The position numbers were made by a program, and so were the translations under genes. A DNA stretch of 64,000 nt from Diadema antillarum (lineage: Eukaryota), in contig NW_027272282.1 in assembly GCF_040938485.1 (NCBI RefSeq), positions 558,001 to 622,000 on the forward strand. The letters are read 5' to 3'. The notes under the pieces were generated by a model, which saw only the letters and a program-made list of their open reading frames with translations, ran no database searches and had not been told where the DNA came from. Shown here in pieces: positions 5,359 to 20,300 of this stretch. Numbering within the stretch: position 1 is the first letter of the stretch; each line of letters opens with the position of its first letter.

Positions 5359-6752
5359 ATTAATAAATATGAAATCCAGCCACCTGCTATACAGTTATGC
5401 AGCAGGGAAATACAGCGAACAAAATAGATTGTTGAGCATACATGCACGTGAACACGCACGCAAGCCATGCACAGTAAACTGTTCAACCGTGAAGAAGTAT
5501 AATGATGTCATTAAATTAATCCCACCGAATTGCGCCTCATTAGAAGAAATGAAATACTGGCACATTATCTCTAATTTGCCAGGTTACTGTCCGTATCGAC
5601 ATGGATTACTCTTTGCAATAATGCATGACATGACGTGATACTACGTGATAGTATACGCAACGACAGCGAAACCGAGTGCGAAATGCAGAATGCGTGAAGA
5701 ATGTCTCTGGGAAACCCTGAGCATTCTAATTAGAGGAAAAACCGCAATGCCGAAAGCATGATTTTATCCCTCAATGTTGCCTGATGAGGGGAGACGGATT
5801 TTGAAAGACTGATGAAGGGTTTTTCCTTCCTTTTTTCCGATAGTACTTCAGCGAAATGAAACTCGTGTCCGCCCATCCTCTCCTTCCCGCGCATTTCTGA
5901 TTAAAGGTTAATACACGCAGGATAAAGCTCGCGAAGTCTGCTAGAAAAACGCGCACGATCTGTTACGTCATTTGCATTACCATCGTTCGTCGTGAGCACA
6001 CGCGAGTCAGTCTCCTCTGCAGCGTGTCCTCAACCAAAGTCGCGGAGTTCGACCTTTTCAAAACCATTCGAAGCAGCATTTACATACTTCCGTTTCTACT
6101 TTTATGCACTCGGGGAAAAAGTGAAAAAAAAAGACTGAGAGAGTTCCTCAGAACCATCGGAATATTACCCTGCATAAATCCACCGGGAAATCAAAATAGA
6201 CATTCCATAAGCGAATGCTCAAAATTTGTTTGTCTTTTAAGCATTCCCGCGTGACTTTAACATCTACTTGTGATTGCATCGTATGAGCGGCAATGATATG
6301 ATTCTTCAAAATGATAAAGCGGACACATCCTCTCTGTCTCTGAACTCAGGGGAGTAAATAAAGCTGTGCTTGACTTTCCTTCCTTCTTTTTTGTGGTTCT
6401 GATTAGATTTATTCCTTATTGACAAAAGTGACTTCACGCATTTGCGCGGCGCGTTATTGAATCACTCATTCTTATGTTTGACATCCCGTGCAGTGTTACC
6501 GACCGCTGGGCGCTTCACTGACGGTCGAGAGCCGAGGCATGCTAGGAGCGGGAACATCAAGGACTCCTACTCCGCCACGGAATCGACCATGTCGGGGACG
6601 ACAACCATGGGCAGCTCAGGCGAAGTGAATATTTGGAAATTATCATGTTTTTAAGACTGCCGCTTTCCTGCATAGGCATTTAGCGGACCAATCTCGTCAT
6701 CATAATTGTATGTTTTGTTCATGTGCGGTCGGGACGAGGACTAAATCAAACT

Positions 6753-7319
6753 ATGTCCACGTTTTACACAGTGTGCGAGATTAGCATTGCGGTCATGTCC
6801 GTGTTGGGCAACGGTCTGGTGCTCTACGTCTACGCCAGCAACCAGAGGCTGCATTCTGTCACCAACTACTTCATCGTGTCGCTGGCCATTGCCGATCTCT
6901 TCGTGGGGTTGTTCGGGGTGCCGTTCGCCATCCTGACGTCGGAGGGACTTCCCCGCGACTTCATCGGCTGCATCATCATGCTGAACTTTCTTCTCTGGCT
7001 CTGCGGAGCCTCCACGTTTAGCCTCATCGGAGTGTCGCTCGATCGCTACGTCGCCATCTCCTACCCGTTGCGCTACAACGTCTTCATCACCCCTCTCCGA
7101 GCCCTGGTCGCCATCGTCGTGTGCTGGATAATGGCGGCCATCGTCGGATTCCTACCCGTGGTCGGGTGGCACCGCGGGCGGCCCGAAACACCCGCCTGCG
7201 TATTCATCGAAATCATCGACATGAACTACATGCTGTTCAATGCCATCATGGTCATTTACATCCCCCTTGTCGTCATGATAGTCATCTACGTCTTCATCTT
7301 CCGTGCTGTTAGAAAACAG
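6753..7319 (+). CDS. First coding exon (TM1-TM5, 189 codons) of an adenosine-receptor-like class A GPCR; gene incomplete in this window
   Basis: Translation MSTFYTVCEISIAVMSVLGNGLV...TNYFIVSLAIADLFVG...GC...SLDRYVAISYPLRY...GW...CVF...MNYM...IPL...YVFIFRAVRKQ has GN1.50, LAxAD, C3.25, DRY, W4.50 and P5.50. It follows the adenosine receptor pattern throughout (E1.39, NYFxVSLA, PLRY, ECL2 CxF, MNYM, RxQ after TM5). High GC3 relative to flanks; A at -3 of the ATG; ends at CAG|GTGAGT donor (intron starts 7320, phase 0). Subtype cannot be assigned. Confidence 0.92.
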
Positions 7320-9539
7320 GTGAGTTCATGTTTTCAAGTCATATACGTTCATACACATGCACGTACCCAATTTCATCATATACTAATGATTTAACGGTTT
7401 ACTCTTGCAAGCCTACTGCGCGAATATGTCACCCCCCCCCCCCCCAGGCATTATCAGTGATTATGTTTGTTCTCTGTTTAAAGATGCTGTGTGTTTGTAA
7501 GATCATGTGTGCATACACAAAAGCCGTCCGCTGTATGCACTATGCACTGACGCAATGACACTTATAAATACACGTCCATCTATCAAAACACCCATGAATG
7601 ATCACAGGACAGTTTGCAGGGAGGGGACCCATGATCAACCATTTTAATTACATGATTAACACCTAATTAACTCTTTCGCAAGGCAATTGCAACTTGAAGC
7701 TTTGCAAACTGACTCGAGAAAAAAAAGGTAAACTGTGTCCAGGCGTGACGTATTGATATGATCGCTTTCATGACTTTTCTTCTCATTTTCATCGGTGATT
7801 TATTTTCTTTCGTTGCATAGCCACCTACAAGAAGCCGACAATGAAGCAGAGCTGAAAGGGAAGATGATAAAGTTTCCTTTCTCTGGAATAACTTCAAATA
7901 TGTATAGGTCTATAGAAATGTAACATGATTACTGAAAGAACAGGAAGATATATTGCGTTACACTGTAACTGGAGACGAATCGTAAAAGTAAAACATGACG
8001 CGGAAAACGTAATATGTTCATTTACTATTCATATCGTCTTGTGATAATAACGTCATAATTTCCACATAACTACCAATTATCCATCCTCTCTTGACTCATT
8101 AGCCTAGCCACAGAAAAGTTATTTGTGGGATGACTTAAATAACGCAGGCCTCACAGTCCACGTTTGCATGTGTGTAATGAGGTAAACGCTGCCGCATTTT
8201 TATTGCTGCGATTTTGCTGTAAAACACCAAAGCACGACAACCAGGAGACAATCAGCAGTGCTTGCAAAGCACGCTCATCCGCCCACGCGCCGTCCCTCTC
8301 TAAAACGTAATGAGGAAACAAAAGAGAAAGCATTCAATCATGAATTATTCATTACCCTTACAAACCTAGTACATTTTGCATGTACTAGTATATGAGTGGG
8401 ATATTTTCCCCACAATATTGTTCAAAGCAATTCCCAAGTGATACTGGCAAGTGCACGGCACTGTTATCTGCGTTTTGTTTCAGCACAATCAACTTTGCAC
8501 GATATTGCAGGAAACTGATCTCACGTGTGATACTGTACTCTAGAATGAATACAAAATAGTTATTTCCCATATTGTTGCTGCACTACTGGACAATTGTTAA
8601 CTCCTAAGGAGGGAGTAACAATAAGCTCATGGAGTCAACTAAAGTTGAAACACGGAGTATCAGTTGGCTGAAAAAGAATAAGTCCGTCTGTAGTTTGCCA
8701 GTGACGTTTCGTCTTTATTGATTGTGACGTCATATCGCTGAAGAAATGAAAGGCATTCCTACTTAGTGAGCTTATTCTCTTGAAAAGCCATTGGGAGGTA
8801 AAAAAAAAAAGGTTGTATATCTCAATTCAGAAATATAGAAGTCTTCGTTCACAGTTTTCACCGTAATAGCAAAAATGTTGTCCCCATGAACCCAAATTTT
8901 GCTGAGCGCGAGTCCGTGTGTCTTTAGCAACAACCATGCCTCGACTTTTACAAAGCGTCCGCTAAGGCTGACTCGAAAGGCCAGATTTTACGATGTTATC
9001 AGAGTAGCTTCATGACCGACATTATTTCTGCTAATAATGTAGCAAAGCCAACATTTGTGACAATTTATGACAACCATCAAACAAAGTGCATTGTGTGGAT
9101 ATAGGAACAATAATTATGTTCCTTCAGCACACAAACCCCAATAAATTTGCAAACCCCAGTGACGGATGGCGTGATCTTGGGGGAAAAACAAAGTATGAAT
9201 ATCAAAGTTTGTCTAATGTTATATTATTATATACCATCACCCCGAAAGTAGAAGGCAATTCCGGACTAGTTACACTACTATTACTACTACTACTACTAGT
9301 TCGAGGGCATGTATTAGCTTCAGCCTATGCCAACTCGGGTTTCATTCAAACGGGTTGCACCTCCGAACCTGTCTATCTATCATGGATGGCTGTCCTCAGT
9401 TCATTAATACTATCAAGGTCTGTGTCCTTCTTCAGTACACTGATGAAAGTGGTCCTACTTCTTCCTCTTTTTGCAATTCCCTGTTTGGCAAATTAGTTAA
9501 AAGTTTGCCTGAAGAGATTTTTTTTTTTTTTAACGCAGC

Positions 9540-14407: not shown

Positions 14408-16743
14408 ATCTTTTCCTTCTCTGCTCTCGGATATGTCGGGGCGAAGTCATGGCGGCCTTAGCGGCTGGTTATTTATCGGCAAATCACGCCCGTGTTAGTC
14501 TCTTTTAGCACTGGCCGAACGGGGCAGTATAAAATGATTCATTATCTATCGACGAGGCCGCGGACATAGGGAAAAGGATAACGAGGCAAAGCTGAGCGAC
14601 TCGTCAGCTGGTTGGGTTGATGCTGAGGGGATTCATTTTGTCCCCTCGCAGATGATGCATCGCTCGCCGCTCGCAATTTTGTGGTGAGACGAGGCCCTCC
14701 TCCCCGCGAAAGATCTCGGGAAGATTGTTATTCGCGATAATTATACAGCTTCTTGAGAGTGATGTTTATCGTGTGCAACGTTATCCCGTGAAGTCGGCCT
14801 GTCCTCTCTTCTCGCTGAGGTGTTCTTCAACTCGTTGTGTCAATAAAGATGAGAATAAGAGAAGGGGGACGTGTAGATGTACAAAGGGGAAACAGGTTGT
14901 CTATTGAGATGAGTCGAAGACACACGAAAACTGCACGGTGTATCATTATTTTCTTTAACCATTTCGATCTGCAGTCCTGATGTGATTGATTATTCTCCAA
15001 CACACAGCATGTCCACAAATATACGTGTATACATAGTCGATTTCTCTTTCTCAGCTATCTTTAGCCTTGGTTGGCCAAAGGGCGTACCCCTGCAGATGAA
15101 AGTGATGAGAGTTGCAAGAGTCAAGTCAATATACTATTATATAGTTAGAGAAAATATCCAATACCCTGTCATGTTAATGTTACTTATAATGGCATGCTGT
15201 CGAATCTTGAAACGAGGTGGTTACTTTATCAAAGTTTCATAACTCCAAAACGTCAGTTTATGACAAAACCGCTTAGCGCTGATCCGTTTTGGGGTTTTGT
15301 GGGATGTGTTTCTTCTTCTTTCATTCCTAAACTTACTGGTTTTTTGTAGATTGAACAGACAACGAAAAAAAAAAAACCTTCACATGTGATTTCGAGCGAT
15401 CTATACATTTTCCCGCTAACGCTTTTTACCTGTCGTAATTTGTACGTGTAAAGCAGAGCACACTGACTGGATTGAAATCCACGTCGGACATCCATCGAAC
15501 GACAGTTTACCCTTTTGTGAACCTGTATGACGAATCACAACGTGGCATTTTCAGGTGTAGTGCACCTGCGTTTCATTTCGCTCTGAAAACAATTTGTAAA
15601 ACTGACTAACGTTTTTGTTCGATGCATTCTAAACAATTTCATGATGAAAAACTCTTGAAGAGATGACAGCCTCAAAGTGAAATGCGATCTTGGGAGGTGG
15701 TATTTTGTTTTGATATGTAGGTCCTATTCTTTGTTGTTGTTTTTTTCTGCAAGTGGTTTTCATTTCAGCTGCCAAGAAATACGATGCTACACTATCTGAT
15801 TGATTAATGTAGGTACAGAGATTTGTTGATTCAAGGGTGAAAGTTTCCCGGAAAACGAGTGCAATGGGAGCATGCGTGTAAATGTGTGCTGTCTCCAAAA
15901 TGATATGAGATGTAGCAGTGCCACAATCACGGCAAACTACTCACTGGCGTCAACCGCGAGAACACGCGCCAAGATGTTTTTTTACTGTGGTCCCATGTAG
16001 GCGTGTATATTTTTCTGGATGTCAACATACGTGCGTGAGCAGCGAGGTTTATTTGTTTTCTTCAAAAGTTTATCTTTCTTTTCTACTCCGTTTCTCTTCA
16101 TAGTCTTGCTCTTTTTAATCTGGATGTTATGCTATGATATTTGCCTGCAGCCTCGATACTGAAAATCTCACACCGTTTTATATTTCATCTCTTTTCTATC
16201 GATTCGTCCCTGCATGTTCTCGTCAACTTTTCCCTTGCCATGATAATAAATTATGGGTTTCTTTGGTAAATGTTTGGGTTTTTTTTCTCAGATTTGACTC
16301 TGCAATGGCTCTCCATCCATCCATCCATCCATCCATCAATCCAAGATCACCGTCTGTTACCGAACTCGCGTCACCCAATTCAAATTTTTATACACATTAA
16401 AGTCACTGTCATTCATGTAGTTTTCTTTGACCTTTATTCTCCTCTCGTTTCGTATGCTTTTCGATTCAATTTTGTCATCTACTTATTGCTCAATGAATTC
16501 TCCATTTCCTCGTCTAGTCCATACCAATGTATAGAGATCAAGGCTTATAACATGTCAACGCAGTCACTATTCAAATATATTACAGGAACCTGATCTCACT
16601 GTGTGAAGATAAACCATGGGTTGGTGACCGGAACTGAACTCATTGTCCCTCTCTTTTTCTCTCTTTCCCTTGTCCTGCGAGAGTTTGAAATGCACCTTGA
16701 CCTTGGTCCTACTATAAGTTCCCGCAGTCACAGGGCTTCCAGC

Positions 16744-16767
16744 CTATGCTATTCCCGAAATATTGTA

Positions 16768-16824
<57 letters not shown>

Positions 16825-16863
16825 TATTACAATATTTCGGGAATAACATAGTCTGGCCTTTTA

Positions 16864-16910
<47 letters not shown>

Positions 16911-16949
16911 TATTACAATATTTCGGGAATAACATAGTCTGGCCTTTTA

Positions 16950-17003
<54 letters not shown>
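16744..17003. repeat. (TA)n tracts with a tandemly duplicated 50-nt unit and an inverted 27-nt copy
   Basis: CACATATATATTACAATATTTCGGGAATAACATAGTCTGGCCTTTTACGA occurs at 16817-16866 and 16903-16952, each followed by (TA)n. 16744-16770 is the reverse complement of 16825-16851 with one mismatch. Confidence 0.9.
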
Positions 17004-17005
<2 letters not shown>

Positions 17006-17105
17006 TGGCATCAAAAGACTTAACCACAACATGGCGGGCGGTGCAAGAACAGTAAATCTATTGACATCAAATCTTGCACATTAATAGACGTGGCTGGTGT
17101 TGGGT

Positions 17106-17167
17106 AGCACCCCTTTAATCATCGAGCTTTCGGGCGAAAAGCCCTTCTTCAGGATTGTGTTGGTGCT
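17106..17167 (-). ncRNA. Mirror copy of the minimal hammerhead ribozyme motif on the minus strand
   Basis: Exact reverse complement of 17221-17282, in the left arm of the palindrome. Confidence 0.7.
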
Positions 17168-17220
17168 GAGTGTGGTCTTGTAGTGTTGTCTGTGTCAGAC
17201 AACACTACAAGACCACACTC

Positions 17221-17282
17221 AGCACCAACACAATCCTGAAGAAGGGCTTTTCGCCCGAAAGCTCGATGATTAAAGGGGTGCT
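17221..17282 (+). ncRNA. Minimal type I hammerhead ribozyme motif (Penelope-like-element type)
   Basis: CTGAAGA (17236-17242), extra A, helix II GGGC-TTTTC-GCCC (17244-17256), GAAA (17257-17260), palindromic AGCT replacing helix III, predicted cleavage after C17264. Helix I is ATC/GAT (17233-35/17265-67) plus distal AGCACC/GGTGCT (17221-26/17277-82). Confidence 0.7.
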
Positions 17283-17324
17283 ACCCAACACCAGCCACGT
17301 CTATTAATGTGCAAGATTTGATGT

Positions 17325-17376
<52 letters not shown>

Positions 17377-20300
17377 TAAAAGGATATATCAATGATCAGA
17401 TGCTGCTGTTTCGAAACGTTACATCTGAAAACAGCAGCATCTGTAGTTCGACTCAAACATTATAGCAGTTATATCATAAAATGCGAGAGTGCTTGCACCA
17501 GAGAATAATTCTACAACCCGTGAGTTCGAGGACGCAGGGTTATGACAAGTCCACAACAAATAATTGAGTTAGGCGACGTACTACCAGCTCGCGCGGGAGG
17601 GTTTTGAGTGCGTAATTGATATACTCCGATGACACCCTGAGTCAATATCTTGGCCAAACAATGCATCCATCTTGGGGTTCTCCATAACCTCTATTTGCCG
17701 TCATCCCCCATCTATTTTAGTCCCCCCCCCCCCCCTTCATCTCAATTCGTATTTCCCTCCTCCTCGTATTCAGCAGACTGAAATCTCCTCCCCGATCTGC
17801 TACAAATTGGGTGCACCGGTCCTGTTTGCATTGATGTCGATATTAGATGGTCCGCGTAATCTGGAGAGCCTTAACAACAACCGAAGCCAAATGCAGAGAC
17901 GAAGGCAAGGAGGAGAAGCCTAGAAAAAACAAAAACAAACGAAACCAAACCAGAACAAAGAGGGGAAAAAAGCTCGACTCTGCTTGATGAAAAGATGCGA
18001 CAGCAACAGATAACGGCGTGGTTCATTTAAAATGGCGACTGCAAATTTGAAATTACATGAGTGCGAGTGAACCTTGAAGCGAAATGATGAATGGCTCGTT
18101 AAGACATTGAGGTAATCCATTTCAAGGCAAGTATGACATTCTCGATGTCTATCTATTATGTAAACAGAGGTGCAAATAAGAGAACCTTAATACTAGGAGT
18201 GTGAAGTGGCCAAAGAGAGAGGGATAGAATGAAAGAGGAGATATGGGGAGAGAAGGAAGGATGGAGTATATACAGAAGAGAGACATGGGAAGCGAAAGAT
18301 AGGAAAGTAAATATCACTAAAAACATTTTGTTGCCTTGTCCCATTGTCTTGGAGACGAAACAATCTGTGACGCGCAATCGTGACAGAGACACCCAGAGTC
18401 GAAAGTTCCTGTATGGGGGAAATAATAATAACCCAAAGATGATTGACAGGTGTCACTGACAAGATATGTATGCTCATGATTTGATCAAAGGCGACAAAAC
18501 CATTGTATATCAGCTGCTTCTTATCAGAGGTTTAAAGGGAATTTCTTTTCTGTGGTCCAGTTGGCTGTAGCAAGACGAGTATTACGTCACACAACTAGAA
18601 CACTGAATGTTTCATTGAAATCAGATGCAAAATAACTAAATTAAAAGCTCTGGACCACTAACATGTAGTCACAAAACACTGGTGTCGAGTTCAAACACAT
18701 TACATACATATCCTGTAACTCTTTCTTGGTTTTACAATAAATTTCCGGGGGAAAAAAATCTTCTTTTTTTTCAATAAGTCCCCGTCTTCAGAGTCGCCAT
18801 TGCTAAATTCCTTGCAACTCCAGAACTATTTAGTGTGAAGGATGCCATTTTGTTCTAGTTATATCACATCAAAAGTGAACGAATGATATTAGGGGAATTG
18901 ATCGGTCATTACATCATTTAATTCATCGAAATTGTATCACTGAAAATGACACCATCGATCCCGGTAAGCTTACAACTTGAGATTTTGCCATTCATAACTT
19001 CATTTCTAGTCTAATTTTTGCCGAAACTTCCACTGTATAGATTTAATTTCCAAACAACGAGTGGAATTTCACGTCGAGTACAGTCACGAAGGTATCACAT
19101 ACCTCCTTGGTATACAGTAACCTTTCCGACACATCTTACCACTGTCGAAGAAAACCAGCGAGCATTCACCTTATTGATATCAACTTCAGAGACCATGTCG
19201 AGAAGTCGTGGTCAGTGGTGGTGACGTGAAATGGTACCGAACGTACATCACCGATATGCTCCTTTCCGATTCTCTCTTTTCTATACGGAGATCTTGTACA
19301 TGAATAAGAAAAATAAACGATAAAAAGAAAATTATGGCAATAAAATGACCTGGGAGCAGTCAGAAATTACATTCATGATATCCATTTATGCAGAAATACA
19401 TGTACTCAGTATCGGGTTTCAGCTGCGCTGCTGTGTACAACCCTGCTTCACAGATGAGAACCTGCCAGTATACAACTGAATAGGCTCTTCTGATGTTCTT
19501 GATCTTTTGTGGTTGTTCTTGATGAGCATGTAGTTCTTGTTCTTGCTTATATAGCTCTTTATCTTGCTCTTGCCAATGGCGTTTTGAAATGCGCTATAGT
19601 GTCTGCACTAGAACGCTAAGTAACGTAGAGCTCGACTTGAATAGAAATTGTGTCATTTCTCGTCAGTGAAACAAAATCTGATGTCTCTTTGGTCGGACTC
19701 TACCCCGCGGGGAATATTTTTTCTCTTCTTCTGAGCTCCTCTCATTCGTTACACAATTTATCATGTATGACATATATGAAATCAATTTAACCTGTTTTTG
19801 TGGCATTTGGAGGTACGAAAAATCGTCGTTATGGTGATGATTAAGTGAATAATTTGATTAATACGACTGGTGCAATTGTGATTGACAGTACAGAGAGTGA
19901 TAATATAGCGGCAAGGTTGAGATGAACGGTCGGATTTTTCGATTGCTGGTGTTGCATTCATAGTTATATCATTGTTGCGTGTTGACATTATTGTATCTGT
20001 TCAGCCTCCCGAAGGTCTCCACGTGCTTCGATGGTAACTGACGTCTTTCTGCTCTTACAAATCATCGAGAAATTAAAAGTGAATAAATGCAAGCAATTTG
20101 ATTTTAAGCGCGATTCCAAACCACGTTGGAGGTGACTCAAATCGGTATAGAGTGTGCTCAAATTGACAGAATTACACAAGTTTGATTTTTCCTGTCCTCT
20201 TCAGTCTCTTCTTGTCTTGTTTGTTATTCCTTCCTCGCTTACAAATAAAAAATCTCTTCTTTAAGAGAGCTGCCTCGTGTTTGTGTATGTTTGCATGTGT

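What the first reader, a model, noticed from the sequence alone, without database searches (positions are those of the whole stretch)
17059..17329. 271-bp palindrome carrying a minimal hammerhead ribozyme motif on each strand
Seen: two 134-bp arms pair perfectly around a 3-nt loop. Each arm contains CTGAAGA-A-GGGC[TTTTC]GCCC-GAA-AGCT-C, flanked by helix I (ATC/GAT plus AGCACC/GGTGCT). Established: minimal type I hammerheads with an extra A before helix II and a palindromic tetranucleotide instead of helix III occur in Penelope-like retroelement pseudo-LTRs and retrozymes, and are thought to cleave as dimers. Inference: this is a protein-free, inverted PLE/retrozyme-like remnant. A transcript from either strand would carry one hammerhead plus its exact antisense, so it could fold as a 134-bp dsRNA (ribozyme masked; possible ADAR/Dicer substrate) or as a self-cleaving unit. 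If it lies in the GPCR pre-mRNA intron, this could affect processing of that transcript.
Basis: partly seen in the sequence, partly recalled or inferred. Interest (0 to 1): 0.8.

Follow-up and report, generated by a model that had tools for sequence, protein, structure and literature searches.

The report
Mirror-image Penelope retrotransposon stubs with hammerheads
The palindrome is real, but it is an ordinary product of a young Penelope-like jumping gene: two mirror-image copies of that element's short, spliced tail, each carrying the element's own minimal hammerhead ribozyme motif, inserted in a TA repeat.

Summary
Arms 17059-17192 and 17196-17329 are perfectly complementary around a 3-nt centre. 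Each carries a minimal type I hammerhead motif, predicted to cut after C17264 on the + strand and at the mirror position 17124 on the - strand.

The arm is the 3' end of a roughly 3.5-kb retroelement encoding a reverse transcriptase plus a C-terminal GIY-YIG endonuclease. The insertion shows the published PLE signatures:
- it sits in a (TA)n microsatellite;
- the two copies lie head to head;
- a 48-nt "tail" is present at one end only.

Two points are added here. Full-length copies carry a 191-nt GTAAGT...TATAG intron directly 5' of the hammerhead core. The window's arms lack it exactly, so they were copied from spliced RNA. The 5' ends of spliced copies cluster 27-32 nt downstream of a TATAAG box. 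Both arms therefore look like complete cDNAs of a roughly 190-nt pLTR transcript, which would explain the symmetry.

This layout (start site, short exon, intron, hammerhead) is already described for Drosophila virilis Penelope. Earlier scan notes report the same kind of stub elsewhere in this genome.

Not shown: cleavage, expression, any effect on the GPCR gene, or read-level proof of this particular locus. It is not a retrozyme. Interest is low.

The parts
16952..17004 (.). Left half of the (AT)n target microsatellite
   Evidence: Every independent insertion of the family that was inspected is flanked by (AT)n.
17005..17052 (-). 48-nt PLE 'tail', the 3'-most part of the left (minus-strand) copy. 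The right arm has none.
   Evidence: 100% identical to the 3' end of full-length copies. In 21 of 22 head-to-head pairs with both ends visible, exactly one arm has the tail. Tail described in PMC8557442 and PMC11167929.
17053..17155 (-). Left arm, exon-2-derived part, carrying the minus-strand hammerhead. Core plus inner helix I lie at 17121-17155, C17 at 17124, and outer helix I at 17106-17111 / 17162-17167.
17156..17195 (-). Left arm, exon-1-derived part. The spliced junction lies between 17156 and 17155. The copy ends at the inferred transcription start.
   Evidence: Read contigs of intron-bearing copies diverge exactly at 17155/17156.
17193..17195 (.). Centre of symmetry (TGT), the junction of the two cDNA 5' ends. 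These bases also fit the left copy.
17196..17232 (+). Right arm, exon-1-derived part.
17233..17329 (+). Right arm, exon-2-derived part, without a tail. It ends in (AT)n.
17221..17282 (+). Plus-strand minimal type I hammerhead motif. Outer helix I is AGCACC 17221-17226 / GGTGCT 17277-17282, and inner helix I is ATC 17233-17235 / GAT 17265-17267. The core CTGAAGA lies at 17236-17242, with a bulged A at 17243. Helix II spans 17244-17256, followed by GAA 17257-17259 and AGCT 17260-17263. The predicted cut is after C17264.
17330..17374 (.). Right half of the (AT)n target microsatellite.

Best explanation
The palindrome is one insertion of a young, probably still active, endonuclease-encoding Penelope-like retrotransposon (PLE) into a (TA)n microsatellite. 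It is made of two head-to-head cDNA copies of the element's terminal (pLTR) RNA.

The template was a short spliced transcript. It starts about 30 nt downstream of a TATAAG box and has a first exon of about 40 nt. A 191-nt intron has been removed. The second exon, of about 150 nt, carries the element's minimal type I hammerhead and ends in the 48-nt 'tail'. Both arms run to the RNA's 5' end, which is why they are equally long and meet in a near-perfect palindrome. One reverse transcription started at the distal site and kept the tail (left arm). The other started at the proximal site and has no tail (right arm).

Shown here: the anatomy, the parent element, the precise intron loss, the clustering of 5' ends and the tail asymmetry.

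Inferred: the transcription start, the two-strand target-primed mechanism (taken from in vitro work on an Anolis PLE), and that the hammerhead can cleave. At this locus the two motifs are most likely inert fossils. A read-through transcript would fold into a 136-bp hairpin that buries the ribozyme. A lone min-HHR with a one-pair helix III is not expected to cut as a monomer.
For: Family and structure:
- The 140-nt arm has at least 72 matches among 380 candidates in the 1.75-Gb genome, at 94-100% identity, mostly as inverted pairs.
- Independent copies lie at unrelated loci, always in (AT)n.

Parent element:
- A 28-nt pattern just upstream of the arm gives 65 hits against 0 for the reversed control, often as -/+ pairs 0.4-6.4 kb apart.
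- Three such loci hold ORFs of 700-940 aa. RVT_1 scores E about 3e-11, and three of the four ORFs scanned also have a C-terminal GIY-YIG at E about 3e-5.
- The arm lies at their 3' end.

Intron:
- Full-length copies have 191 nt, GTAAGT...TATAG, between AACACA and ATCCTGAAGA. The window arms lack it exactly.
- Genome counts are 85 spliced junctions and 163 intron junctions, with controls at 0.

5' ends:
- All 85 spliced copies were inspected. They represent 14 independent insertions.
- The 19 arms crossing the junction end 370-412 nt from the tail end, 15 of them at 375-383.
- That is 27-32 nt downstream of TATAAG.
- None of the arms that extend further upstream is spliced.

Tail: exactly one tail in 21 of 22 pairs.

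Hammerhead: the descriptor gives 2 hits against 0 in 100 nulls. Three further HHR families with different helices but the same architecture occur in the fetched loci.

Literature:
- PLEs target (TA)n, form inverted 5'-truncated copies and have a one-sided tail (PMC8557442).
- The tail is the interval between two RT start sites, and both DNA strands are cleaved and extended (PMC11167929).
- min-HHRs lie in pLTRs, and dual motifs on opposite strands are reported. In D. virilis the intron's 3' end lies at the 5' end of helix I (PMC4209133).
- In D. virilis the intron lies 46 bp from the transcription start (PMC2377424).
Against: - No RNA data: no run on record as RNA holds the sequence. Transcription, the start site, splicing and cleavage all rest on DNA fossils.
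- Rfam hammerhead models do not score the motif.
- Thermodynamic folding of the single arm is not better than shuffles (z = -1.9 and -0.6). The MFE also uses a shifted register for inner helix I.
- Short-read unitigs do not cross the palindrome centre or the AT tracts, so this particular locus is not independently confirmed.
- Only 14 independent spliced events support the 5'-end clustering.
- The comparison set of unspliced copies was partly ascertained with a pattern lying upstream of the cluster.
Confidence: 0.85

Rival explanations
1. It is a non-autonomous 'retrozyme': a hammerhead-bounded unit that is transcribed, self-cleaved and circularised, and spreads as a small circular RNA.
For: It carries a type I minimal hammerhead of the kind found in animal retrozymes. 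Animal retrozymes are now argued to derive from PLE pLTRs (bioRxiv 10.64898/2026.07.22.740005). The roughly 190-nt unit recurs at 14 independent sites.
Against: There are no tandem direct repeats at this locus or at the other inspected copies, only inverted pairs. Each strand has one sense hammerhead, so no unit is bounded by two cleavage sites. All copies span the cleavage site, so uncleaved RNA was the template. No circular-RNA evidence is available.
Confidence: 0.04
2. It is a DNA-level foldback element or MITE that transposes as a hairpin and only by chance or ancestry resembles a PLE end.
For: Its shape is a perfect palindrome flanked by TA repeats. One structural variant occurs in 49 near-identical copies.
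Against: Those 49 copies share flanks, so they were carried inside another repeat. Independent insertions differ in junction and arm length. Precise loss of a GT...AG intron shows an RNA intermediate. The asymmetric tail is a PLE signature. No separate transposase-type terminal repeats were seen, and target duplications cannot be assessed inside the microsatellite.
Confidence: 0.03
3. The palindrome at this locus is an assembly or chimeric-read artefact.
For: No contig of the laid runs bridges the centre or the AT tracts. Palindromes in microsatellites are hard to assemble.
Against: The same head-to-head architecture, with different centre junctions (0, 3, 4 and 9 nt) and the same one-sided tail, recurs at many unrelated loci. 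It is a documented property of PLE insertions. De Bruijn unitigs are not expected to cross a perfect palindrome.
Confidence: 0.04
4. The hairpin has been co-opted as a small-RNA or dsRNA source (endo-siRNA or miRNA-like, or an ADAR substrate) that affects the neighbouring gene.
For: A predicted 136-bp perfect RNA hairpin. Sub-threshold hits to miRNA-precursor models.
Against: All miRNA hits are below gathering score and are generic hairpin matches. There is no RNA evidence. The insertion is very young (arms identical to each other and to the parent's sequence), so conservation cannot be claimed. Location inside a transcript is not shown.
Confidence: 0.04

Closest known systems
Head-to-head, 5'-truncated insertions of endonuclease-encoding Penelope-like elements (Penelope/Poseidon, Neptune and related clades; Evgen'ev and Arkhipova 2005, Craig et al. 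2021)
   Same: RT plus C-terminal GIY-YIG parent, (TA)n target, an inverted copy abutting at the 5' end, an optional tail at only one end, a hammerhead near the 3' end, and a retained spliceosomal intron.
   Different: The tail is 48 nt rather than the quoted 30-40 nt. The clade within PLEs was not determined. Both arms here appear to be complete copies of a short spliced transcript rather than randomly truncated copies.
[quoted passage not shown]
   Same: [quoted passage not shown]
   Different: Helix II is 4 bp, against 7-8 bp in the Schistosoma families. The contiguous helix I is only 3 bp, with a possible 6-bp outer extension. Activity is untested.
Drosophila virilis Penelope regulatory module (Schostak et al. 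2008, PMC2377424; Cervera and de la Pena 2014)
   Same: A short first exon, then an intron whose 3' end abuts the 5' strand of hammerhead helix I. Spliced and unspliced RNAs therefore have different helix I contexts, and both intron-bearing and intron-less genomic copies exist.
   Different: The intron is 191 nt against 75 nt. The first exon is about 40 nt against 46 nt. A TATAAG box lies upstream here, whereas the fly promoter is described as TATA-less and internal. The start site here is inferred from retrocopy ends, not measured.
Animal non-LTR retrozymes (Cervera and de la Pena 2020, PMC7229834)
   Same: Type I hammerhead, PLE-related origin, and a short non-coding unit.
   Different: Retrozymes are tandem direct repeats that yield circular RNAs. 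This locus is a single inverted pair with no tandem repeat.

Membership tests
EN+ Penelope-like element insertion | Parent element encodes a reverse transcriptase fused to a C-terminal GIY-YIG endonuclease | tested here: met
   Three of the four ORFs scanned in L073-L075 have RVT_1 (E about 3e-11) plus a C-terminal GIY-YIG (E about 3e-5). The fourth shows RVT_1 only. The translation shows two cysteines between the GIY-like and YIG-like motifs.
EN+ Penelope-like element insertion | The repeat in question is the element's own 3' terminal (pLTR) sequence | tested here: met
   Arm and tail align at 97-100% to the 3' end of the ORF-bearing copies, about 1.05 kb past the stop codon.
EN+ Penelope-like element insertion | Inverted 5'-truncated copy adjoining at the 5' end | tested here: met
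   Head-to-head arms at the window and at more than 20 other loci, with arm lengths from about 50 nt to more than 3 kb.
EN+ Penelope-like element insertion | [quoted passage not shown] | tested here: met
   A 48-nt tail on exactly one arm in 21 of 22 pairs. In the window it is on the left arm only.
EN+ Penelope-like element insertion | Insertion bias for (TA)n microsatellites | tested here: met
   All inspected independent copies abut (AT)n.
EN+ Penelope-like element insertion | Retained spliceosomal intron, with intron-less copies also present | tested here: met
   A 191-nt GTAAGT...TATAG segment is present in 163 junctions and precisely absent in 85. Splicing itself was not observed in RNA.
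Minimal type I hammerhead of PLEs (min-HHR) | Conserved core C3-A9, G12-A14 and H17, with an unpaired nucleotide between 9 and 10.1, a G10.1-C11.1 pair and a palindromic 15.2-16.2 | tested here: met
   Script descriptor: 2 hits in the window and 0 in 100 null sequences.
Minimal type I hammerhead of PLEs (min-HHR) | Helix I of about 4-6 bp closing the motif | tested here: inconclusive
   Only 3 contiguous pairs (AUC/GAU). A 6-bp outer stem AGCACC/GGUGCU appears in the MFE of the spliced form, but the inner register is shifted and the z-score is only -1.9.
Minimal type I hammerhead of PLEs (min-HHR) | Self-cleavage after position 17 (as a dimer) | not testable with these tools
   No RNA runs. 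Contigs cannot show RNA ends. Cofolding of two monomers did not give a clear dimeric hammerhead.
Rfam hammerhead families (Hammerhead_1, _3, _II, HH9, HH10) | Score at or above the family's gathering threshold | tested here: not met
   No hammerhead match at gathering score or at E <= 10. The likely reason, from my own knowledge and not checked here, is that these models expect a real helix III.
Non-LTR retrozyme | Tandem direct repeats, each with a hammerhead, so that a unit is bounded by two cleavage sites | tested here: not met
   Only inverted arms and no direct repeat of the unit.
MITE / foldback DNA transposon | Moves as DNA, with no sign of an RNA intermediate | tested here: not met
   Precise intron loss relative to the parent.

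The most novel reading that the evidence does not exclude
The roughly 190-nt spliced pLTR transcript may be a distinct, recurrently retrotransposed RNA species whose hammerhead is completed by splicing. Removal of the intron brings AGCACC next to the core, so that the outer helix I can form. In unspliced RNA the intron's 3' end pairs across the cleavage site instead. If so, the hammerhead would be a splice-state-dependent switch, conserved in layout from Drosophila Penelope to this presumably echinoderm PLE. Such short spliced RNAs could also be the stepping stone from PLE ends to retrozyme-like non-autonomous lineages.
Probability: 0.15. Interest if true: 0.55.

Novelty: new member of a known kind. 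Interest (0 to 1): 0.2.

Why it matters
For this locus it matters little. It is a recent, probably neutral transposon insertion, and the same kind of stub was already noted elsewhere in this genome by the scan.

Its modest value is as a clean genomic record of PLE mechanics:
- precise intron loss, which proves an RNA intermediate;
- retrocopy 5' ends that mark a likely transcription start;
- a near-invariable one-sided tail, which fits the two RT start sites and two-strand priming seen in vitro for an Anolis PLE.

The layout of start site, short exon, intron and hammerhead matches Drosophila virilis Penelope. That hints the arrangement is old and functional, and it could be tested with RNA data from this animal.

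Tried and rejected
- **Rfam scans.** Runs at gathering score and at E <= 10 found no hammerhead family. The only hits were sub-threshold miRNA-type hairpin matches, rejected as generic.
- **L004 spacer.** I followed the 321-nt spacer in L004 as a possible 5' extension of the element. It is an unrelated 265-bp high-copy repeat.
- **Possible cleavage footprint.** A recurrent arm variant resumes exactly at the predicted cleavage product (GATGATT...). All 49 copies belong to one flank cluster, so it is a single event. It is better explained as a deletion at a CTC microhomology in a palindrome.
- **Reads.** Four runs were laid on 16300-18300. The unitigs break at the AT tracts and at the centre, so the locus is neither confirmed nor refuted. 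The one raw-read run did not hold the organism. No RNA run was on record.
- **Within-family conservation.** Copies are too young (94-100%) to show selection. The two older copies (82%) are duplicates of each other.
- **GPCR intron.** Motif and hydrophobicity scans for a TM6-TM7 exon downstream of the GPCR exon found none, so the intronic location is not established.
- **More PLE families.** I did not try another route.
- **Promoter scan.** The bacterial promoter/terminator scan on the pLTR is irrelevant to a eukaryote and was ignored.
- **Dimer fold.** Cofolding of two sense monomers was uninformative.
- **Masked stretches.** The N runs in the window were left untouched.

Full report
**Observation.** The sequence is as described. 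Window 17059-17192 and 17196-17329 are exact reverse complements (134 nt) around TGT at 17193-17195. Each arm carries ATC-CTGAAGA-A-GGGC(TTTTC)GCCC-GAA-AGCT-C-GAT, with AGCACC upstream and GGTGCT downstream.

A script encoding the published min-HHR features finds this motif twice in the 64-kb window: + 17236-17264 and - 17124-17152. It finds none in 100 Markov-simulated windows. Rfam's hammerhead models do not report it at gathering score or at E <= 10. The only Rfam hits are sub-threshold miRNA-precursor models that any perfect hairpin would match.

**Surroundings.** The palindrome is embedded in an (AT)n microsatellite (16952-17004 and 17330-17374). The left arm continues for 48 more nucleotides (17005-17052) before the microsatellite resumes. 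The right arm does not.

**A dispersed, young family.** The 140-nt arm has at least 72 matches (380 first-look candidates) at 94-100% identity in the window's own 1.75-Gb genome, mostly as inverted pairs. Independent copies lie at unrelated loci and always abut (AT)n.

The arms meet head to head, with centre junctions of 0, 3, 4 or 9 nt, or with very unequal arms. This argues against an assembly artefact at the level of the family.

**The parent element.** A 28-nt pattern just upstream of the arm occurs 65 times, against 0 for the reversed control. It often occurs as -/+ pairs 0.4-6.4 kb apart.

Three such regions contain ORFs of 700-940 aa. RVT_1 scores E about 3e-11, and three of the four ORFs scanned also have a C-terminal GIY-YIG at E about 3e-5. 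The arm plus the 48-nt extension is their 3' end. This is a canonical endonuclease-encoding Penelope-like element (PLE).

At least 14 ORF copies are 99-100% identical at the protein level and free of stops. Other PLE families at 72-48% identity also exist. The family is therefore recent and plausibly active.

**Match to published PLE behaviour.** Craig et al. 2021 describe (TA)n targeting, an inverted 5'-truncated copy at the 5' end, and a 30-40-bp tail at only one end (PMC8557442). Frangieh et al. 2024 show that the tail is the interval between two reverse-transcription start sites, and that the PLE protein cleaves and extends both DNA strands (PMC11167929).

In the fetched loci, exactly one arm has the tail in 21 of 22 pairs where both ends are visible.

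Cervera and de la Pena 2014 describe the min-HHR of PLE pLTRs with the same diagnostic features. They also report dual motifs on opposite strands 100-700 bp apart, and weak, dimer-dependent activity in vitro (PMC4209133).

**Spliced retrocopies.** Full-length copies carry a 191-nt segment, GTAAGT...TATAG, between AACACA and ATCCTGAAGA, that is 3 nt 5' of the hammerhead core. The window's arms and all other short copies lack it exactly. The genome holds 85 spliced junctions and 163 intron-3' junctions, with controls at 0.

I inspected all 85 spliced copies. They form 14 independent flank clusters, and one cluster of 49 copies was amplified inside another repeat.

The 19 arms that cross the spliced junction end 370-412 nt from the tail end in unspliced coordinates, and 15 of them end at 375-383. 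That position is 27-32 nt downstream of a TATAAG box.

No arm that extends further upstream is spliced. Unspliced pairs have scattered lengths.

The simplest reading is that the short copies are complete cDNAs of a roughly 190-nt spliced transcript initiated in the pLTR. That explains why both arms here have the same length and form a near-perfect palindrome.

In D. virilis Penelope the intron lies 46 bp from the transcription start (PMC2377424). Its 3' end maps to the 5' end of helix I (PMC4209133). The layout is the same.

**The hammerhead itself.** In the spliced form the MFE includes the outer AGCACC/GGUGCU stem. In the unspliced form the intron's 3' end pairs across the cleavage site. Neither fold beats shuffled controls convincingly.

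The fetched loci contain three further hammerhead families with different helices but the same architecture, including U3-A8 core variants and compensatory changes in helix II. This supports the motif class as real.

All genomic copies span the cleavage site, so uncleaved RNA was the template, as reported in vitro for the Anolis PLE. A transcript of the whole palindrome would be a -275 kcal/mol hairpin, so the ribozyme would be masked at this locus.

**Reads.** No run on record as RNA holds the sequence. Contigs from three differently labelled organisms hold the family. They include intron-bearing versions that diverge from the window exactly at 17155/17156. One related organism holds the right flank, with about 60 differences over about 800 nt. 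No contig crosses the centre or the AT tracts. The locus itself is thus neither confirmed nor refuted by reads.

**Host gene.** ORF 6723-7394 (+) is a rhodopsin-type GPCR exon (7tm_1, E = 4e-38, TM1-5), followed by a GTGAGT-type donor. No TM6-7 exon was found downstream in the window. Intronic location is therefore not shown.

**Verdict.** This is a real feature of a known kind. Earlier scan notes on other pieces of this genome, which call it a sea urchin, reached the same reading for similar palindromes. I tested the claim independently here. The spliced-transcript origin and the conserved start-exon-intron-hammerhead layout are the only mildly new points.

Noticed in passing
L015:1990-2050, L026 and L027 flanks (same repeat in 49 loci): The repeat that carried one spliced insertion to 49 copies itself holds a second minimal hammerhead family. 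It has a CTGAGGA core, a bulged A, AATT in place of helix III and U at position 17. Helix II shows compensatory variants (GATG/CGTC, GACG/CGTC, GATG/CATC), and the repeat appears to be another head-to-head PLE stub.
   Followed up: partly
L098:63-94 and L044:2310-2341: Two further minimal hammerhead motifs with the U3-A8 core covariation (TTGAGAA and TTGAAAA). This is the variant described for Schistosoma Cercyon PLEs.
   Followed up: no
L004:1199-1463 (G000:C134): An unrelated 265-bp repeat with about 700 first-look candidates at 97-100% identity. It sits between the two arms of one insertion and again, inverted, 0.4 kb downstream.
   Followed up: no
window 16739-16951 and 17375-17383: Left of the insertion, an 86-nt unit is directly repeated twice. 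It consists of (AT)n plus about 50 nt ending in CCTTTTACG, and it forms inverted repeats around (AT)n. The target microsatellite is bracketed by the 9-nt inverted pair CCTTTTACG / CGTAAAAGG. It may be a microsatellite-centred hairpin repeat that served as the target.
   Followed up: no
window 17398-17446: A 15-bp stem (CAGATGCTGCTGTTT / AAACAGCAGCATCTG) with a 17-nt loop lies just right of the insertion. It has only weak sub-threshold miRNA-model hits.
   Followed up: no
window 6723-7394 (+): A rhodopsin-family GPCR exon covering TM1-5 (7tm_1, E = 4e-38) that ends at a likely splice donor. The TM6-7 exon was not found in the remaining 57 kb, which contain five masked N runs.
   Followed up: partly
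L022:1100-1230 (G000:C909): One single-arm spliced copy lies about 270 nt from a degenerate (CCCTAA)n telomere-type array.
   Followed up: no
G000, many contigs: At least 14 ORF copies of this PLE family are 99-100% identical in protein and free of stop codons. At least five more PLE families (72, 61, 57, 51 and 48% identity) have many open copies, so PLEs look recently active and diverse in this genome.
   Followed up: no
G000:C20:575623-575856, C90:1449677-1449910, C343:557810-558043: Three intron-bearing head-to-head pairs have the same 207-nt spacing of their hammerhead junctions. A second trio or pair has 276-nt spacing. They may be amplified composite units or recurrent truncation points inside the intron.
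   Followed up: no
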